Part shown: positions 7,054 through 64,000 of the stretch, in pieces | How positions within the stretch are numbered: the first letter of the stretch is position 1 | Layout of the letters: each line of letters starts with the position of its first letter | IMG/VR virus record: IMGVR_UViG_3300036766_002181 | Span: 1-64,000 of that record | Strand: one strand, 5' to 3' | Length of the DNA stretch: 64,000 bases | Program-made: the position numbers and the translations under genes | The notes under the pieces: model-generated | What the model saw: the letters and a program-made list of their open reading frames with translations, nothing else | Databases searched by the model: none | What the model was told of the DNA's origin: nothing

Positions 7054-7054
7054 T

Positions 7055-7354
7055 TTATGTTGGATTTCCTCTTTTCATATCACGGCCAATACCTTCCCTT
7101 TTGAGTCTCATAATTCCTTTTATATTCATAGCAAGGGCCCAAACATTAACAATGTTCATAAATAGAAGGGCCATTTGTCCCGGAGCATTAAAGGCAACAA
7201 TAGTTTCGGTTATGAGATAGCCTGTGAAAATTATACAGTTAAGTCTATAGCTTAACCAAAGATTTCCATTTGAATATACCCAAAACTTAAAAAGCTGCAA
7301 GCATACAATGCATGCCGTTAAGATAGAAAGAACAACAGAGGTTTCTATAACCAT
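7055..7354 (-). CDS. Small membrane protein with about 3 TM segments
   Basis: 99 aa with three hydrophobic stretches; TATAAT 6 nt before its ATG; 1-nt gap to the hydroxylase gene. Confidence 0.7.
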   Translation of the reverse strand: MVIETSVVLSILTACIVCLQLFKFWVYSNGNLWLSYRLNCIIFTGYLITETIVAFNAPGQMALLFMNIVNVWALAMNIKGIMRLKREGIGRDMKRGNPT

Positions 7355-7384
7355 ATTATTATTATATGATAAAACTTGTTTGGT

Positions 7385-8185: not shown

Positions 8186-8193
8186 AACAAACC

Positions 8194-8222
8194 AACGTAG
8201 CATAGAACTGGTATAAAATCAA
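8194..8222 (-). promoter_or_regulatory. sigma70-type promoter, near-leaderless
   Basis: TTGATT-N17-TACGTT with TGC extension; 8 nt to ATG 8185. Confidence 0.6.
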
Positions 8223-17200: not shown

Positions 17201-18274
17201 ATTCTCAACCAAAAGATTTTTATGAAGTTTTCTAAAGTGCTTTTTATTGTTTTTTCCCTTTGGGACTTTAAAGGCATAGTTCAAAATTGGATGATTTCCT
17301 GTAATTAAAATATCGTTTTTTCTATTTCCTGGGGTTGAAACAGAATATAGGTTTTCATGTTCGCCAATTTGACGACAATAGGTTTTTTCAACTTTTTTAA
17401 ATCGTCCCTTGTGAGTTAAAACCAGATCCCCAATTTCAATATCCTTTATTTTTTTACAGCCATTTGAAGTTATTATGTTGGTATCTGGTCCCACACATAA
17501 TAATTCCTGCGCCACTCCCATCTCACCTTTTGCCTGGAGAAGGGCTTTTCTTTCTCTTTGAAACCACTTCTCATCTCGTTCAGGATGAACATGCCATGGA
17601 AGCTCAATTGAATGAAAACCATTCTCTCCCTGTTTGGCTCCTATCCATAGATCATAAAACAATCCTTGGGCTCCATTTGGTGTTGAAATAAAAATAACAG
17701 AGCCGCCGTTTGAAAGGGTTGGTTGCAAGCCAAGCCATAGGTCTGAAACGCCCTCAATATGTGCAGCCTCGTCAATAATCATAAGACTTAAGCTTTCAGA
17801 ACGACCTGCATCTGCCGAGGTTGGAATTGCCTTTATCTTTGAACCATTGCTAAAGCTTAAAGATTTTTTTGTATCCTCTGTAAGCTTTGGCATAACAAGC
17901 CAGTCGGGAAGATGATCAAGGGCTGTTCTTACTTTTCTTATGAAGTTCTGGGCCGTGTCTAGCTTGGTAGCAACAACAAGAATGTTTTTCTCTCTCTGAA
18001 ACAGTGCCAACCAGAGGGCATAGGCTGCTGAAGCCGTAGACAATCCAAGTTGTCTGCTTTTATTAACAATTACATACCTGTGTTTTTGAAATGCCTCTAG
18101 GCAGTCTTCCTGATAGGGAAAGGTATGAAACTTAACAAGGCCCTTTTTGGGATGGGATATTTTGACGTATTTGTTTGTGAAATACTTTACGTCAGTACCA
18201 CACTTATAAATCTCTTCGGTTTGTTCTTTCTTATTTGGCCAATAAGAACTTTCTTGGGATTTCAGCTTTGCCAT
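14231..18274 (-). CDS. terL: Terminase large subunit (T4 gp17-like) with two inteins; about 569 aa after splicing
   Basis: Walker A KSRQLGLST, Walker B LMIIDEAAH, motif III ISTPNG, nuclease SGDVARG and DDLVM/SLAI. Confidence 0.95.
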   Translation of the reverse strand: MAKLKSQESSYWPNKKEQTEEIYKCGTDVKYFTNKYVKISHPKKGLVKFHTFPYQEDCLEAFQKHRYVIVNKSRQLGLSTASAAYALWLALFQREKNILVVATKLDTAQNFIRKVRTALDHLPDWLVMPKLTEDTKKSLSFSNGSKIKAIPTSADAGRSESLSLMIIDEAAHIEGVSDLWLGLQPTLSNGGSVIFISTPNGAQGLFYDLWIGAKQGENGFHSIELPWHVHPERDEKWFQRERKALLQAKGEMGVAQELLCVGPDTNIITSNGCKKIKDIEIGDLVLTHKGRFKKVEKTYCRQIGEHENLYSVSTPGNRKNDILITGNHPILNYAFKVPKGKNNKKHFRKLHKNLLVENKFESLDDLLLWKHETNHTRRVIYGCLFPHLQFENILEDNSRKKKYIDLAQFDVANKTVTDNFVKYSRQKSCLKTKRYIPIDFNLGRFIGLCAAEGHVRHNVVGLAFHHQEIDTLGKFCRDYLSNLGYNYFDCKRSYSKCYVILSSNRFARALIRHFIYDGDARTKHYNMENIIKTNKEFIRGLIVGHFEGDGDHPFFHDLDNKLKVVCKSEKMLYQLRTFLSLFGHYTRIGYWNNEPSYLEFDGLTKIKDPKKRNIFTLTDQVHTKEFLDRPTSRSFLLPKEYFVGGFQYQKATLKAGGKMVYNLEVEDDHSYIADSLIVHNCLYQASGDTFLKGEALEKIMLAVKEPIERRAHGRYETWIWKYPEPGHEYIVSGDVARGDGEDFSAFHVIDTTAEEVVADFQGKNPPDEFAEILMQYGRQYNTAMICQELNSVGVACAQKLKEAAYPKLFYEKFQKNIYMTYVSNEVGPNDFPGLTVNQRTREEILAKLENNLRNGFLKVYSKRLFEELQTFIWKRNKPQAIKGKNDDLVMCYDQETEVLTEKGWKYFSDVKSGDMVYSLNIKTGNLELATNLETVDKFVVDRPMINFHTRQVDLLVTENHRMLVSVSAGGNTYRPWSFVEAEKLTGKHFRLKRNIDNWQGNKRESITIPGFSSKNGRKKPNLILPMKDFMLLLGFFISEGSGNKNRLFLSQCYKSKAYIPMQELLERLSDLGVSYAYRPQNNSFEIMDTRLATFIKALVPGIAPTKRIPREFLDLDIPALEQLFLGLFLGDGCRNKKGELTNYVTTSPGLAADVVELVLKLRLSSIVLTPPNYLKQTGGTINGRTIRSKHQTHIVSISRRHNEPRINHHEKNQATKQFYTGKVGCLILDKNHTLFVKRNGKAVWSGNSLAIGCDLFEASGRNQFQNTEAQWALVKGMSVETRVLNPLTGKTSDGFFSLPSPVTRATPGSTEYRKHLDSEAHRGLNSRQVHDYNNQVWDPFRWMFGRD
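14534..15604 (-). mobile_element. Intein 2 in TerL (357 aa) with LAGLIDADG homing endonuclease
   Basis: Begins CYDQETEVLT, ends VWSGN, +1 residue Ser; blocks LLGFFISEGS and FLGLFLGDGC; splicing restores NDDLVMSLAIG. Confidence 0.93.
16235..17497 (-). mobile_element. Intein 1 in TerL (421 aa) with LAGLIDADG homing endonuclease
   Basis: Begins CVGPDTNIIT, ends VYNLEVEDDHSYIADSLIVHN, +1 residue Cys; blocks FIGLCAAEGH and IVGHFEGDGD. Confidence 0.95.
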
Positions 18275-52945: not shown

Positions 52946-53470
52946 TTACTTATCTAGATTATCTATATTGCCCGTGATGTAATCTTCCTCTTCCTCTTCT
53001 TCCCCTTTGCTTTCGTCTTCTTTTGATTCTTCGTCGTCGTCTTCGATAACGGCACTAGAGGCCTCTATATCTTCCCTAACCAGATCATTCATTTTTTCTA
53101 GACGTTCATACATGCTTCCTTCGCTTGTTAATTCATTCTCGTCCTGTGAAACGGCCTCATCTAGAATGTTGGCCAACTGAATCAGTTGTTCATTTGACTT
53201 ATTAAGTCTTTCAAGATATTTCGCAAGAGTCGTTCCGTGGATTGCATGCTCTGTTGGATTTCCATGAACCTTTTCATATAGGTCATAAAACATAATGTAG
53301 GCATTTCTTCGATCAATTACAGAATTTTCATAAATCTGTTGCCAAAGCTGTTTCTTCTTGTCATGAAGGCTTGAAAGGCTATTTAAAACGCTATTAAATG
53401 CCCTGATTTTTTCCTTTGTTTCCTTGTCAAGATTTTTTACGTCATATTCATTGTTTTCTTTTTGTGCCAT
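52946..53470 (-). CDS. Helical hypothetical protein with an acidic tail
   Basis: 174 aa; C-terminal DDDEESKEDESKGEEEEEEDY. Confidence 0.75.
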   Translation of the reverse strand: MAQKENNEYDVKNLDKETKEKIRAFNSVLNSLSSLHDKKKQLWQQIYENSVIDRRNAYIMFYDLYEKVHGNPTEHAIHGTTLAKYLERLNKSNEQLIQLANILDEAVSQDENELTSEGSMYERLEKMNDLVREDIEASSAVIEDDDEESKEDESKGEEEEEEDYITGNIDNLDK

Positions 53471-54780
53471 TAGTATTTCTCGCTTGTTAGTTTTAAGTTA
53501 ATTTTATTCTCGGCTTCTTCTTTTGTTATATTCGGGTTATTGTACCAAAGCTCTTTTTGATAAATAAGAAGCTTGCCAAGTATTGGTCCTGGCTTAAGGC
53601 CATACTTTGCCATCAATTCTTCAGAAGAAAAATGAATAATGGGTCCGATAGAGAAAAAAGACTCTAATTCAGAAACCCTGCTGTTCAGTGGCTTTAAAAG
53701 ATCTATGTATCGTTTGTTATTGGATCTAAAAAGATCGGTTCCTGCCCTAAGAATGCTGGTATCAGAATAACTTTCTTTTTTAATTCTTTGAATTGCAATA
53801 ACAATTGCTCTTATTACCCCAAGCTCCTCGTTTGAGAATTTCAATTTAGAACCAATTTTTGATATACCTGTTATGGGATCTAAATGCTCAAACATTAAGG
53901 CCAATTTGCCAAGGTAGTCTTTTCCGGCATTAACTGCCAGTAAAGTACCCTGTTTGTCATTGGCGATTTGTGGAATCACATACGGCATCAATCCAAGATC
54001 ATAAAGATATGACATGCCAACCTCTGGATTTTTGCCTGTTAAAATCTTTTCCAGTTCTTCACGAATTCTTTCTCCTGAAATCAATTGCAGTTCTTTGGCA
54101 TTTTTCTTAATTGAGTCTTTCATAAAATCAGGAACAAAGTAGTTGTATCTTCCTGCAAATCTAGCGGCTCTAAGAAGACGAAGAGGATCCTCTTTAAAAA
54201 TCTTGTCTGGATCTGAAGGAGTCCTGATAATGCCGTTTGCTATGTCTTCTTTTCCATGGCCCGTAAGATCAAGTATCTCACCAGACATAAGATCCATCAA
54301 TAATGCGTTGATTGAAAGATCTCTTCTGGCCACATCACTAAAAATTGATCCAAATTTTGTTGTAGGCTTTCTGGAGCCAGGGTCATACTCCTCCTCTCGG
54401 GTATTGACCACTTCTATATCCACGCCGTCTAGTTTTATTCCGTTATGAACAACTTTATCCAAAGATACCTTTGCCGTTCCAAATTTGGGAAAGATTACAG
54501 GATTTGAATTGGGTCTATAAATTCCTAGATTTCTGGCAAGAAACTCTGCAAACTTAATGCCTCCATCCTCTAACTCAACAACCACATCTACATCCTTTGG
54601 GTCAACTCCCATAACCATGTCTCTAACCGCACCACCGGCCAAATATACCTTGCCAGCAAAAAGCTTGCTGTTTTTAACCGTTTTCTTTAAAAGATCAAGC
54701 GTTGCTGTAATCTGTTCTTTTGTCGGATCTTTGCCGGGTTGGCCTTCCTGAAGCAGAATTACGTCTTTCCAAATGCTCAT
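53470..54780 (-). CDS. cca: CCA-adding tRNA nucleotidyltransferase (class II, no HD domain)
   Basis: YLAGGAVRD...KDVD, REEEY...SRKP loop, RRDLSINAL, EDPLRLLRAARF, ISGERIREEL. Confidence 0.92.
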   Translation of the reverse strand: MSIWKDVILLQEGQPGKDPTKEQITATLDLLKKTVKNSKLFAGKVYLAGGAVRDMVMGVDPKDVDVVVELEDGGIKFAEFLARNLGIYRPNSNPVIFPKFGTAKVSLDKVVHNGIKLDGVDIEVVNTREEEYDPGSRKPTTKFGSIFSDVARRDLSINALLMDLMSGEILDLTGHGKEDIANGIIRTPSDPDKIFKEDPLRLLRAARFAGRYNYFVPDFMKDSIKKNAKELQLISGERIREELEKILTGKNPEVGMSYLYDLGLMPYVIPQIANDKQGTLLAVNAGKDYLGKLALMFEHLDPITGISKIGSKLKFSNEELGVIRAIVIAIQRIKKESYSDTSILRAGTDLFRSNNKRYIDLLKPLNSRVSELESFFSIGPIIHFSSEELMAKYGLKPGPILGKLLIYQKELWYNNPNITKEEAENKINLKLTSEKY

Positions 54781-54843: not shown

Positions 54844-55953
54844 CTAGTGGAGTTCTTTGGACTTTTTAATGTCTTTGTAGTGTTTTTTCAAACTTGACAA
54901 ACAAGTCGAAAGTTGCTTCCCGCTCAGGCCGCTGAGTTCTTTAATATATATCAAAATTGCCCTTTTATTAAGCAAATCAATATTGTCCAAATTGTCTGCA
55001 ATTTGTTTTATTGCACCTACACACAGAATCTCATTCTCTGTTTTAACCTTATGCGTAAGCTCGCCAATAACCTCATGAAGAAGTTTGTTTTGTTCGACCT
55101 TTGCAAGCATGTCCTCATAAGAAGGCACGACATTAAATGATTCAAACTGGTCTATATCATTTTTGGAAAAGGATTCTCTGTCGTCTGCGCTTATATAGGT
55201 CTTAATTCTTTTAACGTTTTGTTTGGATTTTATGGTTAACCAGTTTTTGCCAACAACATTAAAATAGGAAAAGGCCTTTGTTCCCTTTGTTGCATCAAAC
55301 TTATTAACCGTTGTATAGAGAAACTCAAGACATTCTGCCTTAAGATTTTTCTTTGATTCATAAAGAACCTTAAAGCCATAAACGTTTATTAGATTTTCTA
55401 CAAGAGAATCAAAGGCAGGGAGAATGTGCTTGACATATAACTCTTCTTTTTTTGCAGGGGTTTCTGCTTTTTGGTATTCAACTATATGCTCCTGGGTTTG
55501 CATATCGAAATAATTGTTTGACTTGGTGCCCGGCTTTCTTTTTATTATTCTTCTTTCTTTTTTATTATTGGCCACGCCCACCAGGACAGTTGGGCCTGCT
55601 GGCACAACGACGCTGTGTGCCATCGATAAGGATGCCTCTATGACTGGTAGTGGCGGCGTGGATTGTGCCTTGGAAGAAGCTTTAATTTTTTTGTTAGTAA
55701 TAGTGACAGTAGGCTTGCTTGTTTTTGTTTCTTGCCTAACAAGCTTAAAAGAAGAAGAGGGAGAGGAATGTGCTCTCTTTTTTGTGGCTTGTTTTTTGCT
55801 TGATAACCTTTTTGTTAATCTCTTTTTAACGGCCTTGATCTGATGATGGTGGCGGCGGCGGCGTTGTCTTGATTGATGCCTCTTGCCTTTTCCGGCACTT
55901 CTGGTGCCAGTCGTGTTGCTGTTGCCTTTTTTATTATTGGTTTTTTTCAACAC
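54844..55953 (-). CDS. RNA polymerase sigma-like factor with a long basic N-terminal extension; start uncertain (GTG 55953 or ATG 55623)
   Basis: Region 2-like ECLEFLYTTVNKFDATKGTKAFSYFNVVGKNWL; C-terminal helix-turn-helix-like KRAILIYIKELSGLSGKQLS. Confidence 0.7.
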   Translation of the reverse strand: MLKKTNNKKGNSNTTGTRSAGKGKRHQSRQRRRRHHHQIKAVKKRLTKRLSSKKQATKKRAHSSPSSSFKLVRQETKTSKPTVTITNKKIKASSKAQSTPPLPVIEASLSMAHSVVVPAGPTVLVGVANNKKERRIIKRKPGTKSNNYFDMQTQEHIVEYQKAETPAKKEELYVKHILPAFDSLVENLINVYGFKVLYESKKNLKAECLEFLYTTVNKFDATKGTKAFSYFNVVGKNWLTIKSKQNVKRIKTYISADDRESFSKNDIDQFESFNVVPSYEDMLAKVEQNKLLHEVIGELTHKVKTENEILCVGAIKQIADNLDNIDLLNKRAILIYIKELSGLSGKQLSTCLSSLKKHYKDIKKSKELH

Positions 55954-56413
55954 TATTGCCGCCTTTTTCTTTTTCTCTGTCCTCTGCCTGTTTGCGTAAC
56001 ATGGCCAGCTCTTCCTGCTCTTCGTCCTCTTCAATTATAATGTATTTCTGCTTGCTTCTATCAACAAACTTTTTGATCATGGTATTAAGATCAAATTTGG
56101 CCATTCTAACAGAATCCATAACCCCTCTGACAAGGTGCTGAACTTCTGGGGTATCGAAGAACATTTTCATCTCCAAGACTCCATTAACAGAATTCTCTAC
56201 ATTATTAAGGGAGTCAATAACCTGAGAAAAGTCATCTTCCAATATCATGATAATCATAACGAATCTATATAGATAAAAACAAGCCACGCCAAGTAGTGAT
56301 AGCAATACAACGATGGTTGCGATTAGGGGATAAAAATAAAATGAAAAGCCAAGTAGTCCAAGACAAAAGGTGGTTGAGGCAAAATAAAGAACATAATCAA
56401 AAAATCGTTTCAT
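55934..56413 (-). CDS. Membrane-anchored coiled-coil protein
   Basis: Two N-terminal hydrophobic segments followed by a charged helical region. Confidence 0.75.
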   Translation of the reverse strand: MKRFFDYVLYFASTTFCLGLLGFSFYFYPLIATIVVLLSLLGVACFYLYRFVMIIMILEDDFSQVIDSLNNVENSVNGVLEMKMFFDTPEVQHLVRGVMDSVRMAKFDLNTMIKKFVDRSKQKYIIIEEDEEQEELAMLRKQAEDREKEKGGNSVEKNQ

Positions 56414-56427
56414 AAAATCCGATTGGC

Positions 56428-57633
56428 CTATTCTTTGGCAATCAATTCATTAAAGAAATCATTATATTGTTTTTCAATTGCTTCTGGGCTATGAGAAATG
56501 AGAAGTTTCTCTTTTAATTCTTTTGCCCATCCTGCCGGTACAGAAGGGCTTTCAAAGAATTTTCTCATTTTTCTCTTGGCATCTGCCTCTACCGGATAGG
56601 CCCATCTTGCATCTTTAATAAAGATACTGTTGTCAATTCTACTTTGATGAATTGGTTTTAATTCGTAATCAACCTTAATATACTTTCCCTGCCTAAGAAA
56701 TTCTGTCTGGGCAGACCAATCTGTAACGATTACAGGCAAGCCACAGGTTGCTGCCTCTAGAGTTGGAAGTGAAAAACCTTCTCCGCGAGTAAGGTTTAAA
56801 AGGGCCTTTATCTTTGGATTGGTGTATAAGCTTACGACCTCTGTATCTTCCATGTGGCCATGAAGAAGATATACTTTTGCCTTGCTTTGAATCAATTTCT
56901 GACACTCTGCCACAATGGCGGCCAGGGTTCTCACAGAGGCGGCCTTGTCTGCCGTTGTGTTACGACCGAAGTTTGTTTTAACAACAAGTCCAACGGAAGG
57001 ATTATCCTTAAACTCTTCTAGGAACCACTTGATGGTATATGCAATATTTTTTCTATCATTTTCAGGATTGTTTCCTGTAAATTGAGAAACTACCAAAAAA
57101 TTAAAATCTGCCTCTGTTAAAAGGGATGTTAATTCTTGATTTTCTTTGGTTTCTGAGCCTGCTCGACAAGCCTCAAACCAGGATTCAGGAATAACCTTTA
57201 GAGGCACTTTAATTTGGCCAGAATTTTCAAGAGTTCTTTTTATGTGTTCTGAAGGCACAAGAACGGCACTCATTCTATTAATGCAATCAATCCACACGGG
57301 ATTGCATCTGTCTGTTTCAACCGCAGCAGTCAGACCAATATTGGCCTTTGCCAAAAATGGATCCCATTCATTTGGAAGCTGCAATTGAAAACTATAATCA
57401 TATATCGCATCTTTATTTTTGTTGCTATTTTGAATAATCTGACCAATTAAGCCATTACAGGCCTTTGGATCGACGAACCAGGGAGTTGTTCCCCAGGGAA
57501 CCGGATCAAAGACAACCTGAATATCTCGCTCTTGATTTTCTTGTCTATTTAAAAACCATCTAGCAATCTGTCGGGCGTGAACCCCATAACCTGCACCTGT
57601 GAGCACTGGTGCTCTGAAAATTATAGTTTTCAC
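56428..57633 (-). CDS. GT-B (GT4-like) glycosyltransferase
   Basis: RGEGFSLPTLEAATCGLPVIVT (EX7E motif). Confidence 0.92.
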   Translation of the reverse strand: MKTIIFRAPVLTGAGYGVHARQIARWFLNRQENQERDIQVVFDPVPWGTTPWFVDPKACNGLIGQIIQNSNKNKDAIYDYSFQLQLPNEWDPFLAKANIGLTAAVETDRCNPVWIDCINRMSAVLVPSEHIKRTLENSGQIKVPLKVIPESWFEACRAGSETKENQELTSLLTEADFNFLVVSQFTGNNPENDRKNIAYTIKWFLEEFKDNPSVGLVVKTNFGRNTTADKAASVRTLAAIVAECQKLIQSKAKVYLLHGHMEDTEVVSLYTNPKIKALLNLTRGEGFSLPTLEAATCGLPVIVTDWSAQTEFLRQGKYIKVDYELKPIHQSRIDNSIFIKDARWAYPVEADAKRKMRKFFESPSVPAGWAKELKEKLLISHSPEAIEKQYNDFFNELIAKE

Positions 57634-59036
57634 TTATGTTGCTCCCCTTCTTCGATGGCCTTTAGATTTATGGGAGTCAAAGTCCAATTGCCTCTCCCGG
57701 CCTTTTTCTTTTCTTTAAAGTCACCAATGCAGCCATCAAGAGTCTTGTCCCAATCTTTAATCATATTGTCATAGTTGAAGGCATAGTCGGCATAGTCTAT
57801 AACCTTGTTTTTCATTTTTTCTTTTTCTTCAAAAGTCATTTCAAACAGCCTCAAAAGTCCATTGGCAACGTCTTCGTCTGCTGCAAAGTCCTCGTAAATG
57901 TAAGGCACCAATTGCGAACCCACGAGAGATCTCTTAACAGGCTTAAGGGCAACTCCATTTTCAGAGCCATCTCTTGGATCAATTGCCTTGCTTGTTTCTC
58001 CGCCCGTGCAAAGAGCAACTACTGGCTTTCCACACTGTAATGCTATCAGGCCCTGAAGTCCATAACCCTCTGCCTTAGAAATGTTAATTGTTGCATCAAC
58101 CGAGTTTTGTAAAAGATTCATTTTGTCAAACTGAAGCTTCTCTGTAGAGAACCAAACGGTATCCTGAAGACCAAGAAGTTCGGTTATTGCAAATAGATTT
58201 GGGCCTTCTTTATCCTTTGGGTCTGTATGCATAATCAACAATGCGTTGTTATGTCCGTGCTTTGCCTGAAGCTTTTCTAAAAACTTCTTCCAGCATACAA
58301 GCAAGTCTCCTGGCATTTTTCTATGAGCATTTCTATTAACCCACAAAACCTTAAACCAATCTTTTTTATCTTCACCAAAATTTTCTGCCTTTGTCCTATC
58401 AAGATCTTCTGGTGGAATTGGAAAATAAACATTTTTTGGAAAGGTATGAGGAATATAGTGAGTTTTATCTGGAAAGTTTGGCTTAATAAGATCATAGGTT
58501 TTCTGTGCCAAGCAATTGATTAAATCAGTTGCCTCATACCAGGGATTATTAAATGCAGGATAGGGATCGTTATCCCAGACATGCCAATATGCAATAGGAC
58601 AAACCTGATGAATTTCGTCTTCCATTTCCCACAGCCAAACAAACTGTCTGGGATCTGTAAATATAACAATTGCATCTGGTCTTTCTGTAACCAACAGGCT
58701 TCTTAAAAGCTCCTTGGACCCAAAGCCATCAACAGGCTTTATTATAAAATCAGGATTGATGGCAACCGTATCATATTTTTCATGTTTTATTGCCCCGCCC
58801 AAACAACGAAAGGTATATCTTCCTGTTTTGATTAAGCCCTCAATAAGAAACCTAGACTGTACGCCAACCCCAGAAACACAAACCTGCATATCGGATATAA
58901 AGATGATTTTGTGTTTTTTTATTGGTCTAATAAACAAGTCATCATCATCATTGTCTTTTAAGATTGTATGCTGAGTATTTGATGTAATCAAAAGAGGTAA
59001 CTCGCCGCCGCTGTCTTCTGCCGGTGATATGGTCAT
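57630..59036 (-). CDS. GT-B (GT4-like) glycosyltransferase, degenerate EX7E
   Basis: SGVGVQ, VNRNAHRK, AEGYGLQGLIALQCGKPVV. Confidence 0.88.
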   Translation of the reverse strand: MTISPAEDSGGELPLLITSNTQHTILKDNDDDDLFIRPIKKHKIIFISDMQVCVSGVGVQSRFLIEGLIKTGRYTFRCLGGAIKHEKYDTVAINPDFIIKPVDGFGSKELLRSLLVTERPDAIVIFTDPRQFVWLWEMEDEIHQVCPIAYWHVWDNDPYPAFNNPWYEATDLINCLAQKTYDLIKPNFPDKTHYIPHTFPKNVYFPIPPEDLDRTKAENFGEDKKDWFKVLWVNRNAHRKMPGDLLVCWKKFLEKLQAKHGHNNALLIMHTDPKDKEGPNLFAITELLGLQDTVWFSTEKLQFDKMNLLQNSVDATINISKAEGYGLQGLIALQCGKPVVALCTGGETSKAIDPRDGSENGVALKPVKRSLVGSQLVPYIYEDFAADEDVANGLLRLFEMTFEEKEKMKNKVIDYADYAFNYDNMIKDWDKTLDGCIGDFKEKKKAGRGNWTLTPINLKAIEEGEQHK

Positions 59037-59091
59037 TATTTATCTCTCGCCCTTTATAATATGCTTTTTAAACTTGAAATTGTTTGCCTTT

Positions 59092-60246
59092 TTACCAGCG
59101 CTGCTCCCAAAAAGAATCTCCTGAGAGATTGTTTAATCTCTCCTTCTCTAAAACCTCTCGATAAATTCTTTCTATCTTGTTAATATTGGTTTCCAAGGAA
59201 AGATATTCGTTATATCTTTTTTTGGCATTAACACTTAATTCTTCTCTATACTCTGGGCTGTTTTTTAGCCTTAACATTTCAGCAATATAGTCTCCTTCTG
59301 TTTCCACAACATTACCGGCATTGCCAATAGTCTCTTTATGGCCCATTGCCGGGGCTACGTGGCTGATTACGGGCAGGCCGTGGTACATGGCCTCTGCTAT
59401 GGCCAACCCCATTGTCTCGCCGTCAGAACGCCCGTGGGCGAAGACATCGAGGGTTTCTAGAAAATCATTTTGGTCCTTCTCGTCGCCGGAATGAGAAATA
59501 TGATGAAAATTCTTTAAACCAAGCTCTTGTGCCTGTTTTTGATATTTGTCTCCCCCGCCCATTAAGACAAAGTGGGTATCTTCATTTTCGATTTTGCCAT
59601 AAGCCTGCAATGGAACAGGAGACATAATTCCATCATCTGCCCTTTGGTGCATCCCATAAACAAAGTCTGTTTTTGATATACCAAGTTTTTCTCTAAAACT
59701 TGATGCCTTATCAATTTCAGGAACCTCAGAACATATGGGAACAATTTCTATAAGACTAGAATTGCCGCCTGCCCTTACCCAAGAGTCTGCCTGCCACTGG
59801 CTTATATGAATTGATTTCTTTATAAGGGGATTTTTGTCTGCCATTCCTGGCAGGGTAATAATATCAATAATTGGAGTTTTCTTTATTTCGGTAAAGGGAT
59901 ATTCGGGATGACCAGCACGGCCTGTTTGGATTATGTCGTAATCCTCTTCTTTAAAAAGCGACCAAAAATTTGTATTAATCCAAGGATGGTGAGGCTTTGT
60001 TATATCCTTGGCTTCCAAATCAAACTTAACAAGTTTAACATTAGAATTTTCAACATAGGCCTTTCTGAAGGAATCCGTGTCAGGATGTTTCCAACTTGAT
60101 CCAACATAGGGGACAGAATCGCAATAAAAACAGGTTACATCGAAGTCCTCTTTTTTCTTGGCTAGATTTACGGCAATAGTCTGAAGAAACCTTTCTGTGC
60201 CGCCAGTGGCAAGAGCACAAAATTTCACTACTGCAACTTTAATCAT
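59092..60246 (-). CDS. GT-B (GT4-like) glycosyltransferase
   Basis: GGTER, DVFAH...GETMGLAIAEAMYHGLPVI. Confidence 0.92.
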   Translation of the reverse strand: MIKVAVVKFCALATGGTERFLQTIAVNLAKKKEDFDVTCFYCDSVPYVGSSWKHPDTDSFRKAYVENSNVKLVKFDLEAKDITKPHHPWINTNFWSLFKEEDYDIIQTGRAGHPEYPFTEIKKTPIIDIITLPGMADKNPLIKKSIHISQWQADSWVRAGGNSSLIEIVPICSEVPEIDKASSFREKLGISKTDFVYGMHQRADDGIMSPVPLQAYGKIENEDTHFVLMGGGDKYQKQAQELGLKNFHHISHSGDEKDQNDFLETLDVFAHGRSDGETMGLAIAEAMYHGLPVISHVAPAMGHKETIGNAGNVVETEGDYIAEMLRLKNSPEYREELSVNAKKRYNEYLSLETNINKIERIYREVLEKERLNNLSGDSFWEQRW

Positions 60247-60302
60247 TGTTGGCCACCATCACCAAATTGCTGAATAAAATCAATTTTGTATAACTTATAT
60301 CT

Positions 60303-60310
60303 ATATTTAT
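60303..60310 (+). promoter_or_regulatory. Putative late-promoter motif ATATTTAT
   Basis: 4 nt before ATG 60315 of the sulfotransferase. Confidence 0.45.
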
Positions 60311-60314
60311 TTTT

Positions 60315-61019
60315 ATGAACATTTTGGTTGCCGGAATGATGAGATCAGGAAGCACTTTGCTTTTTAACATGATTGTAAAAATCTATAAAACACAAATGCC
60401 AGCCAAGAAACTTCATATAAAAAGATTTGAGTGGCTAAAACAAAAGGCTGCCTCTGAGCCGACGAACGATATCGTTTGTACAAAGACGCACATGCCAAGT
60501 GAGCCTGGATTAAAATGGGCAAATCTTATATTCACAACAAAAAGAGATATTAGAGATTCTTGTGCCTCTGGTTGGCGAAGGCGAGAAAATGATTATAAAA
60601 AAAGAAAAACAAGAACTCTGGGTAAAAAAGATGAAGTTTTACAAACGCTATGCAAGCAAAATATAGCCTATTTTAATGAATGGAAAAAACATACAAGCTA
60701 TGAACTTGTTTATGAAAGATATATGACCGAGCCATTAGTGGTAATTGAAGAGGTTTCAAAAGTGCTTAATCTACCAATTAATGATCCGATAGCGCTTAAA
60801 TCAATTTATGATTATTTAGAATTCCTACCAACTGATAAAAATTTAAATGACAAAAAAGAACATCCTGAAACCTTATTATCAAAGGATCATAAAACAAACA
60901 ATGGAGAAATTGGTGGCTATAAAAAAACTCTAAACAAACAAGAAATAAAAGACTTACAGGCTCTTTGCAAAGATTGGCTTATAGAAAATGGCTATCCTCC
61001 TTCAGAAGACAATTCTTGA
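60315..61019 (+). CDS. PAPS-dependent sulfotransferase-like protein
   Basis: 5'-PSB loop AGMMRSGSTLL, KTH, 3'-PB motif KRDIRD...S, YERY. Confidence 0.8.
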   Translation: MNILVAGMMRSGSTLLFNMIVKIYKTQMPAKKLHIKRFEWLKQKAASEPTNDIVCTKTHMPSEPGLKWANLIFTTKRDIRDSCASGWRRRENDYKKRKTRTLGKKDEVLQTLCKQNIAYFNEWKKHTSYELVYERYMTEPLVVIEEVSKVLNLPINDPIALKSIYDYLEFLPTDKNLNDKKEHPETLLSKDHKTNNGEIGGYKKTLNKQEIKDLQALCKDWLIENGYPPSEDNS

Positions 61020-61915
61020 ATTTCTAAAATATGCCAGATCTGAAGACCTTTGAACTTTTCTACTCCGTGCTGTTTAATCATTTTTCTTATTTCTTGTAAG
61101 TGCCAATTATTCTTTCGATGATCTTCATAAAGATTTAAACTCGGAAGACAATTGGATTTTGACCGCCATTCTTCAGGTATGGCGGTCACTAGAGCATTCG
61201 GATCCTCCATGGTAATCTTATATGTTTGATTTATCGAATCATCCGACTTGTTGCTCAGGGTTTTTTCTATACATCTATACCAGGCTTGTTTTATTTGAAA
61301 GGATTTCCAATCAGAAAATTGATAATGAAATACTGCTCCATATTTTGGATTTAGGCGTATCAGCATATCTTCAGAATTGTTTCCTGGGGTTCTTCCTTTA
61401 TGGATTAGTCCCTCTTCTGCGGAAATTTTTCCATCATCACAAACAATAAAGTCTTTAAAATTGTTGCTCCATACACTTTTGTCATCTCTATAATGGTCCA
61501 GAGACTTCCACATGGCCAGCCATTGCATTGTTATTTTTTGTCCTGGCAAAAGAGTTTCCATAACCTTTTTTGCCTTGAGATGAAAATTGGCAGTAAAGGC
61601 CTCATCTGCATCAAGACAAACAAAGTGCGTTCCATTCCTCTGTCTTCCAAGCTCTAGGAGTTTTTGTCTAAGTTTCTCAACAGGATAATCTTTCTTTTCT
61701 GCGATTCCTGGACTTATAAGGATTGGAATTTTAAACTCTCTGCTTGCCTTTTCTAAAACTTCTACACTTCTATCTGTAGAAAAATCATCAATCGCAACAA
61801 TCTCGTCAACGACGCCTGTCAAAGAAGAAACAAGTGATTTAAGAAATTTCTCTTCATTTTTGAAGGCAAATAACGCAACTGGTCTAAATTTGTTCATCAT
61901 TTCCAATTTTGTCAA
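60992..61915 (-). CDS. GT-A (GT2-like) glycosyltransferase
   Basis: FKNEE, IVAIDDFSTDRS, CLDADE, FHYQ. Confidence 0.9.
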   Translation of the reverse strand: MTKLEMMNKFRPVALFAFKNEEKFLKSLVSSLTGVVDEIVAIDDFSTDRSVEVLEKASREFKIPILISPGIAEKKDYPVEKLRQKLLELGRQRNGTHFVCLDADEAFTANFHLKAKKVMETLLPGQKITMQWLAMWKSLDHYRDDKSVWSNNFKDFIVCDDGKISAEEGLIHKGRTPGNNSEDMLIRLNPKYGAVFHYQFSDWKSFQIKQAWYRCIEKTLSNKSDDSINQTYKITMEDPNALVTAIPEEWRSKSNCLPSLNLYEDHRKNNWHLQEIRKMIKQHGVEKFKGLQIWHILEIQELSSEGG

Positions 61916-62103
61916 GTATAAGGGGTGACTTTAACATCAACATCAGAAACGCACTGTAGAGGTGCTACCACCGATATCAAATAACATTTAGAATCACACG
62001 ATTGAATATAGTTTACAGCATCTTCTTTTGATTCATATGAAGTTGAATAAAGATCCTCGCTCTCGGTTAGCTCAATAACAACAAATTCGCCACCAACCCT
62101 CAA
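61912..62103 (-). CDS. Small acidic hypothetical protein
   Basis: 63 aa filling the gap between two GT genes, with an overlap on one side. Confidence 0.5.
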   Translation of the reverse strand: MRVGGEFVVIELTESEDLYSTSYESKEDAVNYIQSCDSKCYLISVVAPLQCVSDVDVKVTPYT

Positions 62104-62105
62104 AC

Positions 62106-62957
62106 CTAACCAACCTCCTTTGCATCACCAAAATTTATCATATGCCTTACATCATATCCTCTCTCTGCGACAGAAGCCACATATTGTTGAGATATTTTGT
62201 CTAAAATATTATATCTCAGTTCAATCATTGTTCTTTCAATGGGCTGAACACCATCTCCCCTGGTACTTAAGCCTTTTTGTTCATCAAGATAATATCCTAA
62301 AATTCCTGGGACCATTCCTATTTTATAGTTTTTTGCAAGTCTAATGGCAAAATCAAAGTCTGCTCCTGATTTTAGTTGCTCATCAAAATAACCAATTTTA
62401 TTAATTACTTCTTTTTTAAACATAAAAAATGGACCAAGATGCATTCCTCTTTCAAGCTCTTTTGGATTTTCAATTGTAAAAGAATGGTCTACAAGCTTGC
62501 CGGTTTTCAATCCTGGCTTATTCACGATAACAAAATTTCCATGAACCACATCATAATCCCTTTTATTAAACAAAAATTCTATTTGTTTAAAAATGCTATC
62601 AGGGGTTCTTAAATCATCCACATTCCAAATAGCCAAATATTCGCCTGAAGCCTCTTGAATACACCTATTCATAGAAACCCCAATTGGGTCCACAGGAGAT
62701 GCTATAATATGTCTGATTCTATTTGGATATTTTTCTTGAAATTCTTTAACCAACAAAATTTCTTCTTCAGAGGGTTCATTGTGATCAAGAACGACTTCTA
62801 GGTATTCGAAACAATGTTGCCTTGGAAGCTCTTCTAAGAAGAGCTTAAGATAATTCTTCATTTTATAACAGGGCGTAATTGTGCTTACTTTTATTCCCCT
62901 GTTATCATCTATTAAAACTTGTGTCATAATATGATAAGGCCTCCTTAACTCCAACAT
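62106..62957 (-). CDS. GT-A (GT2-like) glycosyltransferase
   Basis: VSTITPCY, N..IQEASGEYLAIWNVDD, IGYFDEQLKSGADFDFAIR. Confidence 0.92.
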   Translation of the reverse strand: MLELRRPYHIMTQVLIDDNRGIKVSTITPCYKMKNYLKLFLEELPRQHCFEYLEVVLDHNEPSEEEILLVKEFQEKYPNRIRHIIASPVDPIGVSMNRCIQEASGEYLAIWNVDDLRTPDSIFKQIEFLFNKRDYDVVHGNFVIVNKPGLKTGKLVDHSFTIENPKELERGMHLGPFFMFKKEVINKIGYFDEQLKSGADFDFAIRLAKNYKIGMVPGILGYYLDEQKGLSTRGDGVQPIERTMIELRYNILDKISQQYVASVAERGYDVRHMINFGDAKEVG

Positions 62958-63813
62958 CTAAAGATATGGTTGGTTTCCAGTCTGTAAAGGCCTTAAGGGC
63001 AAACCCCGGCTCTATCTTGGCATCCTTTTGAACTCTGTCTTTCTTTTGTGCAAATATCAGCTTGCACTTTGTTGCCTTTTCAAACATTTTAGCAAGGTCT
63101 TTTATTTTAACCCATTCTCCTGAAGAAATCTCAAAGGCTGATAAGTTGTTTGTTTTTAACCAGGTTTTTACATGCCTCTGCTTGTTGGCAAGTCTGATTA
63201 AGGCAGAGCAGGCATCTTTAACGTGCAAAAACTGTCTAGACTCTTCTCCGTCGGTTCTCGTTTCTATTTTGCCATTTTTTAAAGCAGAGATTGCAAAATC
63301 ATTCATAACATGATTTTTTTCTTTCTCATCAGGATGTTTATAGTTTATTCCATAAATGTTCCAAAATTGAACAGAGATCCCATCAACAGAGCCAACATAT
63401 CTTTCTCCAAGCAGTTTTAAAAGACCGTATGTTGACTTTGGAATTTTTGTCATCATGGTAGAAGTAAAAATAACAAGCTTATTTTGTTTCTTAATTTCAG
63501 CAAAAACGTTTTTCATTATTGAAATATTGTTTTCAATAAAGGCATATTCGTGTTCGTGCTTCTCAAGATAGTTTGCCCCGCCTACATCAAAGGCCAAGAA
63601 ATAAACCACGTCTGACTTTTTCATTAGACTTCGTAGAAGTTTTTTTGATGATTCCTTGGAAAGGTCTTGCCTAGTTTTATTATTTCTAATATCAAACTCA
63701 TGTACATTAAAGCCTTTTAGCCCAAGTTCCTGAACCAGATGTGAGCCAATTAGACCTTCGGAACCCAGGACAAGGGCAGAAGGTTTTTTTACTTTGTTTC
63801 TTTTGTGCTTCAT
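62905..63813 (-). CDS. NAD-dependent NDP-sugar epimerase/dehydratase (extended SDR)
   Basis: LGSEGLIG, YFLA, YGLLK (YxxxK), NIYG, RQFLHVKD. Confidence 0.9.
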   Translation of the reverse strand: MKHKRNKVKKPSALVLGSEGLIGSHLVQELGLKGFNVHEFDIRNNKTRQDLSKESSKKLLRSLMKKSDVVYFLAFDVGGANYLEKHEHEYAFIENNISIMKNVFAEIKKQNKLVIFTSTMMTKIPKSTYGLLKLLGERYVGSVDGISVQFWNIYGINYKHPDEKEKNHVMNDFAISALKNGKIETRTDGEESRQFLHVKDACSALIRLANKQRHVKTWLKTNNLSAFEISSGEWVKIKDLAKMFEKATKCKLIFAQKKDRVQKDAKIEPGFALKAFTDWKPTISLDVGVKEALSYYDTSFNR

Positions 63814-64000
63814 GACTCTTTTGACAAGATGTTAAGGTAATTTTCAGCGCCCTGTTTTAGGGTATGATTCTTTAAAATATAGTCTCTTGGAGAATATGTT
63901 TTTAAATTTGATAAAAAGAAGTCAAATTTTTCTTGCCGAAAAGAGGAGCGAATTGGTTCTTCGTCAAAAACATAGCCACAAAATTTATCGTCAAAATAGG
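63810..64000 (-). CDS. 3' end of a probable glycosyltransferase-like gene, truncated by the window
   Basis: CGYVF...FDFFLSNLKTYSPRDYILKNHTLKQGAENYLNILSKES*, with the stop overlapping the next ATG (ATGA); possible frameshift near 63980. Confidence 0.45.
   Translation of the reverse strand, partial: YFDDKFCGYVFDEEPIRSSFRQEKFDFFLSNLKTYSPRDYILKNHTLKQGAENYLNILSKES

What the first reader, a model, noticed from the sequence alone, without database searches (positions are those of the whole stretch)
56428..64000. Candidate phage virion glycosylation and sulfation system
Seen: three GT4-like, two GT2-like and probably a sixth GT gene, an NDP-sugar epimerase and a sulfotransferase in 7.6 kb (continuing past the window), immediately upstream of and co-directional with the sigma, cca and baseplate genes. 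The enzymes look soluble, and no flippase, polymerase or GtrA/B/C-like genes were seen. Established: serotype-converting phages use membrane Gtr systems; T-even DNA glucosylation uses one or two enzymes; some mycobacteriophages and giant viruses glycosylate their own virions. Inference: stepwise assembly of a multi-sugar, sulfated glycan on Ser/Thr-rich virion proteins, acting as a shield or adhesin. DNA hypermodification or host envelope remodelling remain alternatives.
Basis: partly seen in the sequence, partly recalled or inferred. Interest (0 to 1): 0.82.

Follow-up and report, generated by a model that had tools for sequence, protein, structure and literature searches.

The report
Jumbo phage glycan-building gene cluster
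A 245-kb phage from sediment carries about ten soluble sugar-handling enzymes next to its baseplate genes, built around a glycosyltransferase pair that a whole clade of aquatic phages shares; what the sugars are attached to (virion, host surface or DNA) is still open.

Summary
Window 56428-64000 holds three GT4-type and two GT2-type glycosyltransferases, an SDR sugar epimerase, a PAPS-type sulfotransferase, and the 3' end of a fourth GT-B-like gene. None has a membrane segment. Two corrections: the sulfotransferase is on the opposite strand, and the locus runs about 7 kb past the window, adding two GT2 genes, up to a PD-(D/E)XK nuclease gene.

The locus has two layers. GT4_468 and GT4_401 are ancient tandem paralogues. 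Both keep E-x7-E, and the nearest solved structure for both is chlorovirus B736L. They occur together in 77 of 78 related viral contigs and in cultured phages immuto, Mel-JY01 and RM378. They diverge in step with baseplate genes. All other enzymes lie in a hypervariable island. The sulfotransferase is found only in this contig.

The acceptor is not shown. I rate virion proteins about 0.37, host envelope about 0.28 and DNA about 0.13. Points bearing on this:
- No priming transferase or flippase-like protein appears among 719 flanking ORFs.
- No DNA base-modifying gene lies nearby, and published analysis of immuto DNA reports no glycosylated base.
- No Ser/Thr-rich acceptor tracts were found.
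- In distant relatives the pair sits among replication genes.

I class it as a new variant of a known kind, of moderate interest.

The parts
56428..57633 (-). GT4_401: retaining GT-B (GT4-like) glycosyltransferase; second member of the conserved core pair
   Evidence: Pfam Glycos_transf_1 at 32.7 bits. Present in 77/78 related loci. E285-x7-E293 conserved. AF2 pLDDT 93. Foldseek best hit 3oy2 B736L, E 2.9e-16. Paralogue of GT4_468 (hhalign 97%).
57630..59036 (-). GT4_468: retaining GT-B (GT4-like) glycosyltransferase; first member of the core pair and the most conserved gene of the neighbourhood
   Evidence: Present in 78/78 related loci at 37-63% identity. E323-x7-E motif. Family profile against PDB 3oy2, E 1.7e-13 over the full length. 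AF2 pLDDT 89. Foldseek 3oy2, E 7e-19. Identity to relatives tracks baseplate J (rho 0.69).
59092..60246 (-). GT4_384: accessory GT4 glycosyltransferase; first gene of the variable island
   Evidence: Pfam Glycos_transf_1 at 57 bits. Found in only 4/78 relatives.
60247..60314 (.). AT-rich 68-bp divergent spacer between the GT4_384 start and the sulfotransferase start. It must hold the sulfotransferase's own promoter.
   Evidence: Sequence read; gene orientations.
60315..61019 (+). PAPS-type sulfotransferase on the opposite strand; accessory gene unique to this contig
   Evidence: Pfam Sulfotransfer_1 at 47 bits. The motifs GMMRSGST, KTHMP and RDIRDSCAS are present in the translation. No relative in the viral-contig scan or in the 78 loci. 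Only 85 clusters at E<=1e-10 among 1.84 billion representatives. Relatives sit in NDP-sugar/glycan clusters. Lowest GC of the locus, 0.332.
60992..61915 (-). GT2_307: accessory GT-A (GT2) glycosyltransferase
   Evidence: Pfam Glycos_transf_2 at 29.2 bits. Found in 3/78 relatives.
61912..62103 (-). 63-aa ORF of unknown function between the two GT2 genes; may not be a gene
   Evidence: Listed. No family match. Not called by JGI or Logan.
62106..62957 (-). GT2_283: accessory GT-A (GT2) glycosyltransferase
   Evidence: Pfam Glycos_transf_2 at 40.1 bits covering the whole domain. Found in 4/78 relatives.
62905..63813 (-). Extended-SDR NDP-sugar epimerase/dehydratase
   Evidence: Pfam Epimerase at 80.4 bits. 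phrog_540, E 1.5e-37. GSEGLIG and YGLLK motifs.
63810..64000 (-). 3' end of a 337-aa divergent GT-B-like gene (contig 63810-64823)
   Evidence: Gene table. Sub-threshold Glyco_transf_4 hit. Atlas structural neighbours are GT-B/GT4 clusters, TM 0.63-0.82.
55934..56413 (-). 159-aa protein with one N-terminal hydrophobic segment, directly after the pair; conserved in part of the lineage
   Evidence: Hydrophobic segment at residues 16-41. Homologues in 31/78 loci at the same position.
54844..55623 (-). Conserved 259-aa protein after the pair; possibly a divergent phage sigma factor (lead only)
   Evidence: Found in 58/78 loci. No Pfam or PDB hit. Atlas feature neighbours include viral Sigma70_r2 clusters, score 0.98.

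Best explanation
The region is the downstream half of a phage glycan-assembly locus of about 14 kb (contig 56.4-70.7 kb), in a jumbo myovirus of about 245 kb from sediment. It has two layers.

(a) A core. This is a tandem pair of paralogous, soluble, retaining GT-B (GT4, B736L-like) glycosyltransferases. The pair is inherited vertically in a large clade of aquatic myoviruses.

(b) A hypervariable island between the PD-(D/E)XK nuclease gene and the pair. In this phage it adds two more GT-B enzymes, four GT2 enzymes, an NDP-sugar epimerase and a PAPS sulfotransferase.

Proposed mechanism (inferred). In the infected cytoplasm the enzymes use host NDP-sugars, partly re-tailored by the epimerase, to build an oligosaccharide step by step. 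The core pair lays down the conserved inner sugars. The island enzymes add a lineage-specific outer part, which in this phage alone is also sulfated.

Most likely acceptor (inferred, not shown): one or more phage-encoded virion proteins, modified before or during assembly. That would give particles a variable glycan coat.

Shown: the enzyme families, their intact motifs, their solubility, the core-plus-island architecture, and the vertical inheritance of the pair. Inferred: the order of action, the donors, the acceptor and the biological role.
For: Enzymes and motifs.

Structures. B736L of a chlorovirus is the best hit for both members of the pair.

The two members of the pair are homologous over their full length.

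Distribution of the pair:
- GT4_468 in 78/78 and GT4_401 in 77/78 IMG/VR relatives, in conserved order with the baseplate module.
- Also in immuto, Mel-JY01, a 484-kb phage and RM378. The known hosts span Bacteroidota, Cyanobacteria and Rhodothermus.
- GT4_468 is the most conserved gene nearby. Its identity to relatives tracks that of baseplate J (rho 0.69), as closely as structural genes track each other.
- In 185,579 species genomes the family was found only in MAG contigs, nearly all with phage synteny, and in no isolate genome.

The island:
- 63/78 relatives carry other sugar genes within 10 kb of the pair. The count is 96 SDR, 48 GT2, 25 WecE-like and 17 GT4.
- The 719 flanking ORFs fall into 402 clusters at 50% identity.

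No export or priming parts:
- 681 of 719 flanking ORFs have no hydrophobic segment, and only one small ORF has more than two.
- No Bac_transf, WecA, Wzx or Wzy family appeared among the families shown for the single-segment ORFs.

Against DNA as the acceptor.

Relatives of the sulfotransferase sit in glycan clusters. One of these is a flagellin-glycosylation-like island with Maf-type proteins.
Against: - No glycoprotein evidence exists for any phage of this clade.
- No Ser/Thr-rich acceptor tract was found in window ORFs, and the major capsid and tail proteins were not even identified.
- In immuto, Mel-JY01, RM378 and two huge phages the module lies among replication and nucleotide-metabolism genes, not structural genes. 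Adjacency to the baseplate is therefore weak evidence.
- The candidate promoter motif AATATTTA, found before four genes including cca, does not occur in the GT cluster. There are no expression data.
- B736L's own acceptor is unknown (PMC9614988). Fold neighbours are generic GT4 enzymes, many of which act on small molecules.
- The published reading of comparable jumbo-phage clusters is host surface modification (PMC7824862).
- Polysaccharide-pathway GTs are also soluble, so solubility does not discriminate.
Confidence: 0.37

Rival explanations
1. Host envelope remodelling. The phage enzymes act on the cytoplasmic face of the membrane on undecaprenyl-linked (or lipid A-core) intermediates primed by a host enzyme. 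The altered O-antigen, capsule or exopolysaccharide is then exported by the host's own machinery. This would block superinfection or stop progeny from being trapped on cell debris.
For: - This is the standing interpretation of multi-GT/epimerase clusters in jumbo phages and cyanophages (PMC7824862, section 3.4.10).
- The enzyme families seen here and in relatives are those of O-antigen and capsule loci: GT2, GT4, SDR, DegT/WecE, NeuB, hexapeptide acetyltransferases and FkbM methyltransferases.
- Hypervariability between related phages resembles surface-polysaccharide loci.
- GTs of such pathways are peripheral or soluble, so one search does not argue against it.
Against: - No polytopic membrane protein (flippase, polymerase or transporter type) was found among 719 flanking ORFs of 78 loci, and no priming-transferase family appeared among the families listed for ORFs with a hydrophobic segment.
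- The core pair is vertically inherited and is the most conserved gene of the neighbourhood, across phages whose hosts belong to different phyla with different envelopes. An accessory anti-superinfection function would be expected to be patchy.
- The family was not found in any isolate genome or cellular polysaccharide locus.
Confidence: 0.28
2. DNA hypermodification. The GTs attach a mono- to oligosaccharide to a hydroxylated or hydroxymethylated base of phage DNA to evade restriction, as in T-even phages, RB69/DLP3 and the metagenomic 5hmC-glycan clusters.
For: - GT-B enzymes of the BshA/MshA type and GT-A enzymes, with epimerases and secondary GTs, do glycosylate 5hmC with up to three sugars (bioRxiv 10.1101/2023.12.21.572611).
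- In distant relatives the pair sits next to nucleases, IMPDH, RNR and DNA polymerases.
- T4 has a loosely similar gene order, 55 (sigma) - a-gt - 47 - 46.
- B736L is also a top HHpred match of T4 alpha-GT (PMC6024577).
Against: - No thymidylate-synthase homologue, 5mYOX/TET, C5-methyltransferase or DpdA was detected in the families scanned in the window, or in the gene table up to contig 82.9 kb.
- tblastn with T4 gp42, alpha-GT, beta-GT, Dam and gp56, and with the immuto Dpd/Que proteins, gave no hit in the window or in about 100 related loci.
- hhalign of both pair families against T4 alpha-GT gave probability below 1%. No T4 GT appears in the Foldseek top 50.
- Published HPLC-UV-MS of immuto virion DNA, a phage that carries the pair plus five more GTs, shows canonical dA, dC and dT, and fdPreQ1 in place of dG (bioRxiv 10.1101/2023.04.13.536721).
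- Eight GTs plus a sulfotransferase exceed any known DNA glycan.
- Caveats: about 160 kb of this contig was not seen, and minor or digestion-resistant adducts could have been missed in immuto.
Confidence: 0.13
3. Another cytoplasmic acceptor. The core pair makes a soluble glycoside (of the sucrose-phosphate, trehalose, bacillithiol or mycothiol type) or glycosylates a host or non-virion phage protein to take over metabolism. The island would be functionally separate.
For: After B736L, the best sequence and fold matches of the pair are BshA, MshA, sucrose-phosphate synthase, TreT, OtsA and GlgM. All of these act on small soluble acceptors. The neighbours in distant relatives are metabolic genes such as IMPDH, AlaDH and RNR.
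Against: The pair is physically tied to further GTs and NDP-sugar tailoring genes in 63/78 relatives, and in immuto, Mel-JY01 and TJE1. This points to an oligosaccharide rather than a monoglycoside. No gene for an acceptor-making or phosphatase step was recognised.
Confidence: 0.12

Closest known systems
Sugar/'LPS' gene clusters of jumbo phages and T4-like cyanophages (e.g. the P-SSM2 15-gene cluster; Iyer et al. 2021, PMC7824862)
   Same: Several paralogous GTs of different families plus NAD-dependent epimerases/dehydratases. Content is polymorphic between related phages. There are no export genes, and the function is untested.
   Different: Here the cluster is anchored by a vertically inherited GT4 pair next to a PD-(D/E)XK nuclease gene. 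No sugar kinase or nucleotidyltransferase was seen in this contig. A sulfotransferase is present. The phage lineage is different (baseplate J only 28% identical to immuto and Mel-JY01).
Actinobacteriophage virion glycosylation (Freeman et al. 2023, Cell Host Microbe; recalled from my own knowledge, cited in PMC11256854)
   Same: Phage-encoded soluble GTs beside structural genes. This is the proposed way of working: a cytoplasmic O-glycan on virion proteins.
   Different: Those systems have 1-4 GTs, and their acceptors are Ser/Thr-rich C-terminal extensions of capsid and tail-tube proteins. No such tracts were found here. No sequence-level relatives appear among mycobacteriophages, and Arthrobacter phage GTs appear only as fold-level neighbours. 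The hosts of the cultured relatives here are not actinobacteria.
Autonomous glycosylation of giant viruses (chlorovirus GTs including B736L/A546L; clade-specific Megavirinae clusters; PMC9614988, PMC4691112)
   Same: Virus-encoded soluble GTs and NDP-sugar enzymes. Cluster content is specific to each clade. B736L is the nearest solved structure for both core GTs.
   Different: Those are eukaryotic viruses. Identity to B736L is only about 15-16%, and B736L's own acceptor is unknown. Virus-encoded glycan sulfation is not described there, to my knowledge.
Phage DNA glycan hypermodification clusters (T4 alpha/beta-GT; 5hmC-glycan BGCs, bioRxiv 10.1101/2023.12.21.572611; 5hoC arabinosylation, PMC13326640)
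   Same: GT-A and GT-B enzymes with epimerases and secondary GTs in phage genomes, often near replication genes.
   Different: The defining base-activating enzyme (ThyA homologue, or C5-MT plus 5mYOX) was not found. There is no similarity to T4 GTs. The DNA of a relative shows no glycosylated base.
Gtr serotype-conversion cassettes of temperate phages
   Same: Phage genes that alter a glycan.
   Different: GtrA, GtrB and GtrC are membrane proteins acting on Und-P-glucose and periplasmic O-antigen. Nothing comparable is present.

Membership tests
CAZy GT4-like retaining GT-B glycosyltransferases (core pair) | Two Rossmann-like domains (GT-B fold) | tested here: met
   AF2 models with pLDDT 89 and 93. 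Foldseek top hits are GT4 structures with E 1e-16 to 1e-19.
CAZy GT4-like retaining GT-B glycosyltransferases (core pair) | E-x7-E motif in the C-terminal domain | tested here: met
   468 family: AEGFGLSTLE with E323 invariant. 401 family: GEGFGLPLLE with E285 invariant and E293 at least 90% conserved. In RM378 p014 the second E is H.
CAZy GT4-like retaining GT-B glycosyltransferases (core pair) | Pfam Glycos_transf_1 above the gathering score | tested here: inconclusive
   GT4_401 scores 32.7 and GT4_468 scores 26.0 against a cut-off of 26.4. The family profile hits GT4 structures at E 1.7e-13.
CAZy GT4-like retaining GT-B glycosyltransferases (core pair) | Glycosyl transfer with retention from an NDP-sugar | not testable with these tools
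   Needs an enzyme assay.
Phage virion glycosylation system (actinobacteriophage type) | GT genes adjacent to virion structural genes | tested here: inconclusive
   Met in this lineage, where the baseplate module follows in at least 53 loci. Not met in immuto, Mel-JY01, RM378 or huge phages.
Phage virion glycosylation system (actinobacteriophage type) | Ser/Thr-rich acceptor extensions on capsid or tail proteins | tested here: not met
   No 40-aa stretch with S+T above 0.40 in any ORF of 100 aa or more. Only modest [ST][GA]S enrichment in the 1128-aa LamG protein. The major capsid and tail-tube genes were not identified.
Phage virion glycosylation system (actinobacteriophage type) | Glycan demonstrated on virion proteins | not testable with these tools
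   Needs glycostain or glycoproteomics. No such data were found for the clade.
Phage DNA sugar-hypermodification cluster | Base-activating enzyme (ThyA-type hydroxymethylase/hydroxylase, or C5-MT plus 5mYOX/TET) with the GTs | tested here: not met
   None seen in the families scanned in the window or in the gene table to contig 82.9 kb. tblastn with T4 gp42 and Dam gave no hit in about 100 loci. About 160 kb of the contig was not seen.
Phage DNA sugar-hypermodification cluster | GT related to known DNA glycosyltransferases | tested here: not met
   hhalign against T4 alpha-GT gave probability below 1%. No T4 GT in the Foldseek top 50.
Phage DNA sugar-hypermodification cluster | Glycosylated nucleosides in virion DNA | not testable with these tools
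   For the relative immuto, published HPLC-UV-MS reports dA, dC, dT and fdPreQ1 only.
Wzx/Wzy- or ABC-dependent surface polysaccharide locus | Priming phosphoglycosyl transferase, flippase/polymerase or transporter | tested here: not met
   No polytopic protein among 719 flanking ORFs. No such family among the families shown for ORFs with a hydrophobic segment. None in this contig.
Wzx/Wzy- or ABC-dependent surface polysaccharide locus | Several GTs plus NDP-sugar tailoring enzymes | tested here: met
Gtr serotype-conversion cassette | GtrA flippase, GtrB bactoprenol glucosyltransferase and GtrC membrane transferase | tested here: not met
   No membrane proteins of that kind. GT2 hits are to soluble types.
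PAPS-dependent sulfotransferase (Pfam Sulfotransfer_1) | Family match above threshold, with 5'-PSB loop, catalytic His and 3'-PB motif | tested here: met
   47 bits against a cut-off of 22. GMMRSGST, KTHMP and RDIRDSCAS are present in the translation; the motif assignment is from my own knowledge of SULT enzymes. Atlas fold neighbours are sulfotransferases, TM 0.79.
PAPS-dependent sulfotransferase (Pfam Sulfotransfer_1) | A glycan as acceptor | tested here: inconclusive
   3 of 4 informative contexts of the nearest relatives are NDP-sugar/glycan clusters. The N-terminal parts of fusion relatives have no informative Pfam family.

The most novel reading that the evidence does not exclude
A large, mostly uncultured clade of aquatic myoviruses coats its virions with a phage-made glycan. 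This would include phages of hosts outside the actinobacteria. The inner part of the glycan would be laid down by a conserved GT4 pair and the outer part diversified by a hypervariable island. In this phage it would include sulfate, which would be the first virus-encoded sulfated virion glycan.
Probability: 0.12. Interest if true: 0.85.

Novelty: new variant of a known kind. Interest (0 to 1): 0.55.

Why it matters
Multi-GT clusters in large phages are common, but their targets have hardly ever been tested. They are usually labelled 'LPS genes' by default.

This analysis shows that one such cluster is built on a conserved, vertically inherited GT pair. The pair is shared by about a hundred environmental contigs and by three cultured phages (immuto, Mel-JY01, RM378). 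The question 'what do phage sugar clusters glycosylate?' can therefore be tested directly in a laboratory system.

If the target is the virion, glycan coats would be a widespread and variable trait of aquatic phages. That would bear on adsorption, aggregation, grazing and defence evasion. If the target is the host envelope or DNA, the conserved pair would be a new core enzyme of that process.

A phage-borne sulfotransferase inside such a locus is rare.

Tried and rejected
- Megablast of the region against phage records found no match.
- Single-sequence PDB searches of five enzymes found no hits. Donor sugars could not be predicted.
- NCBIfam gave only far sub-threshold, mixed hits. No specific enzyme name is justified.
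- Sigma-70 promoter and terminator scans were not above shuffled expectation.
- The T4 late-promoter motif TATAAATA is not enriched. AATATTTA is a candidate motif, but with only four well-placed sites and none in the cluster.
- The search for expression data found only one DNA run, from a sediment metagenome, and no RNA.
- Net charge was tried as a test for DNA binding. The 468 family is acidic, but T4 alpha-GT is mildly acidic too, so this does not discriminate.
- The T4 gene order 55 - a-gt - 47 - 46 was checked. It was rejected as homology evidence, because the nuclease family and gene order differ and there is no GT similarity.
- The sulfotransferase fusion partners carry no informative Pfam domain.
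- The solitary GT4_468 homologues in two proteobacterial MAGs have uninformative contexts: a histidine-kinase-like ATPase, IS21 IstB and a Ser/Thr kinase.
- No papers were found on Mel-JY01 or on the RM378 glycosyltransferases.
- I did not walk the remaining 160 kb or so of the contig, because each look-up adds only about 10 kb.

Full report
**What the window is.**
The window equals the first 64 kb of a 244,715-bp metagenomic contig. The contig is JGI 3300036766 Ga0373622_0000067, also IMG/VR UViG_3300036766_002181, and a 40-kb Logan contig of one sediment-metagenome run holds the same region.

It is a large myovirus. The window holds a gp25-like protein, baseplate J, a T4-type large terminase with intein signatures, SbcC, a primase and a CCA-adding enzyme. 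It has no close relative among deposited phages. Baseplate J is only about 28% identical to those of Flavobacterium phage immuto, Microcystis phage Mel-JY01 and a 484-kb uncultured phage.

**Checking the observation.**
- three GT4-type genes (401, 468 and 384 aa);
- two GT2-type genes (307 and 283 aa);
- an extended-SDR epimerase (302 aa) with GxxGxxG and YxxxK;
- a Sulfotransfer_1 protein (234 aa), whose translation shows a PAPS-loop-like GMMRSGST, a KTHMP motif and an RDIRDSCAS motif.

The ORF that runs off the window end is a 337-aa protein. It has a sub-threshold GT4 N-domain hit and GT-B structural neighbours. No enzyme has a hydrophobic segment.

Three corrections are needed.
- The sulfotransferase is on the + strand. 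It diverges from GT4_384 across a 68-bp AT-rich spacer and overlaps the end of GT2_307 tail to tail.
- The locus continues beyond the window with two more GT2 genes and many small ORFs. It ends at a PD-(D/E)XK nuclease gene and an IMPDH-like gene.
- The 'sigma' gene is only a lead. It has no Pfam or PDB match, and the support is language-model neighbours that are viral sigma clusters.

**The locus has two layers.**
A viral-contig scan with GT4_468 returned 78 distinct related loci. tblastn of all local proteins against them gave these counts:
- GT4_468 in 78/78 and GT4_401 in 77/78;
- the PD-(D/E)XK gene in 62;
- the sigma-like gene in 58;
- gp25 and baseplate J in 53.

The order is fixed: nuclease, 468, 401, a small membrane protein, the sigma-like gene, two unknown genes, gp25, baseplate J. 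In most relatives the nuclease gene abuts GT4_468.

The other enzymes of the finding occur in only 0-12 of the 78 loci. They sit in an island inserted between the nuclease gene and the pair. The sulfotransferase and the CCA gene occur in none.

The two core proteins are homologous to each other over their full length (hhalign 97%). Both keep the E-x7-E motif. Both give confident GT-B models. Their best match, by profile and by fold, is chlorovirus NY-2A B736L, followed by BshA, MshA, glycogen, sucrose-phosphate and trehalose synthases.

**The pair is old and phage-specific.**
It is adjacent in immuto and Mel-JY01. It is also adjacent in Rhodothermus phage RM378, where the unannotated neighbour p014 belongs to the 401 family.

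GT4_468 is the most conserved protein of the neighbourhood (median 50% identity). Its identity to relatives tracks that of baseplate J (Spearman 0.69), about as well as structural genes track each other. The two GTs track each other at 0.87. This correlation uses one reference sequence and non-independent loci, so it is an indication and not a test.

A scan of 185,579 species genomes found the family only in MAG contigs of inconsistent taxonomy. Nearly all of these show phage synteny, and none is an isolate genome. Two solitary copies lie in high-GC proteobacterial MAGs next to IS and kinase genes.

**The island is a hot spot.**
Within 10 kb of the pair, 63/78 relatives carry other sugar genes. 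Iterative profile searches from annotated seeds found 96 SDR epimerase/dehydratase-like ORFs, 48 GT2, 25 WecE-type aminotransferases, 17 further GT4 and 3 PglD-like acetyltransferases.

The 719 flanking ORFs fall into 402 clusters at 50% identity. Pfam on a subset added NeuB, FkbM methyltransferases and hexapeptide acetyltransferases.

Immuto has its own island after the pair: GT2, two WecE genes, a methyltransferase, a mannosyltransferase, an acetyltransferase, an epimerase and another GT. Mel-JY01 has GT-A, methyltransferase and GT2 genes after the pair.

The GT2_332-GT2_247 couple of this contig recurs behind IMPDH and PD-(D/E)XK genes in a 461-kb contig and a 319-kb contig. The island here is slightly AT-richer than the rest (0.362 against 0.385), and the sulfotransferase is lowest at 0.332.

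**What is the acceptor?**
Nothing computed here shows it. The evidence on each candidate is as follows.

*DNA.*
- No ThyA-type, TET-type, C5-methyltransferase or DpdA gene was seen in the families scanned in the window, in the gene table to contig 82.9 kb, or by tblastn in about 100 related loci.
- The pair shows no similarity to T4 alpha-GT.
- Published HPLC-UV-MS of immuto virion DNA reports canonical dA, dC and dT, with fdPreQ1 replacing dG.
- Against dismissing DNA: multi-GT DNA glycan clusters with BshA/MshA-like GT-B enzymes do exist. In distant relatives the module lies among replication and nucleotide genes. About 160 kb of this contig was not examined.

*Host envelope.*
- This is the usual reading of such clusters, and the enzyme families fit.
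- However, no polytopic protein was found among the 719 flanking ORFs, and no priming or export family appeared among the families listed.
- A function aimed at host surfaces would not be expected to have a core that is vertically inherited across phages of Bacteroidota, Cyanobacteria and Rhodothermus.

*Virion proteins.*
- A phage-supplied acceptor explains the conservation of the pair and the all-soluble enzyme set.
- It has precedents in actinobacteriophages and giant viruses.
- It fits the position before the baseplate module in this lineage.
- The sulfotransferase's nearest relatives lie in NDP-sugar clusters. One of these is a flagellin-glycosylation-like island with Maf-type proteins and a GT41.
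- Against it: no Ser/Thr-rich tracts, no identified capsid or tail-tube genes, no expression data, and no glycoprotein data for any relative.
- B736L's own acceptor is unknown, and B736L is also a top match of T4 alpha-GT. That hit therefore does not discriminate.

**Verdict.**

This is a genuine phage glycan-assembly locus with a conserved GT4 pair and a variable island. A phage-intrinsic acceptor is somewhat more likely than the host envelope, and DNA is less likely. My estimates are: virion proteins about 0.37, host envelope about 0.28, DNA about 0.13, and another cytoplasmic acceptor about 0.12. The remainder is unassigned.

Sulfation is an accessory trait of this single phage. As a kind of system it is a new variant of the known phage sugar clusters. 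Its value lies in the conserved pair, which makes the acceptor question testable in cultured immuto.

Noticed in passing
window 53470-54780 (-): A CCA-adding enzyme gene sits between the sigma-like gene and the baseplate module. None of the 78 related loci has it. ARAGORN finds no tRNA gene in the 64-kb window.
   Followed up: partly
window 14231-18274 (-): The large terminase is 1347 aa and carries Hint, intein-splicing and LAGLIDADG signatures at two places. It probably holds one or two inteins.
   Followed up: no
window 9886, 28242, 30244, 54797 (minus strand): AATATTTA lies 15-45 nt upstream of four minus-strand genes, including cca and probable structural genes. These are 4 of its 6 minus-strand occurrences. 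It may be a phage promoter core. It does not occur inside the GT cluster.
   Followed up: partly
L086/L087 5678-8750; L088/L089 2760-8744: The block IMPDH-like - PD-(D/E)XK - GT2 (about 335 aa) - GT2 (about 248 aa) recurs in a 461-kb contig, next to a split DNA pol III alpha gene with an intein. It also recurs in a 319-kb contig labelled as a Paceibacterota MAG, followed there by FkbM/CmcI methyltransferases, GT2 genes, SIS, GT4 and an epimerase.
   Followed up: partly
L097 5908-7290; L098 60-1442: Solitary GT4_468 homologues (56-57% identity, 460 aa) occur in high-GC Lysobacterales and Burkholderiaceae MAG contigs. They have no GT4_401 partner and no phage synteny. Their neighbours are a histidine-kinase-like ATPase, IS21 IstB and a Ser/Thr kinase-TPR protein.
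   Followed up: partly
L002 4710-5318 (contig about 68496-69104, + strand of the contig): A reverse-strand gene inside the island encodes a protein with an N-terminal hydrophobic anchor and weak PDZ hits. Relatives carry N-terminally anchored Trypsin_2 proteins, mostly on the reverse strand, near the pair (6 of 32 ORFs scanned).
   Followed up: no
L092 1-16648: The nearest cellular relative of the sulfotransferase lies in a bacterial island. The island holds a TPR-GT41 protein, an epimerase, an HpcH aldolase, two MptE-like (Maf-type) plus FkbM methyltransferase proteins, and a sulfotransferase-radical-SAM fusion. It looks like a flagellin-glycosylation island that may produce a sulfated glycan.
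   Followed up: no
L090 7449-8726 (RM378 p014): The RM378 'hypothetical protein' next to its annotated glycosyltransferase is a full-length member of the GT4_401 family (hhalign 98.5%). The second glutamate of E-x7-E is replaced by histidine, so it may be inactive.
   Followed up: partly
window 55624-56034 (-): The longest ORF of the sigma-like gene (TTG start, 396 aa) would add a very basic K/R/S-rich N-terminal stretch of about 137 residues. This stretch is absent from all homologues (225-281 aa), and gene callers disagree (259 or 369 aa). The 393 nt between this gene and the upstream ORF are unexplained.
   Followed up: partly
window 6514-8203 (-): A fatty-acid-hydroxylase-like protein (179 aa, below Pfam threshold) and an ATP-grasp protein of the R2K clade (272 aa) lie side by side in the early/replication part of the window.
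   Followed up: no
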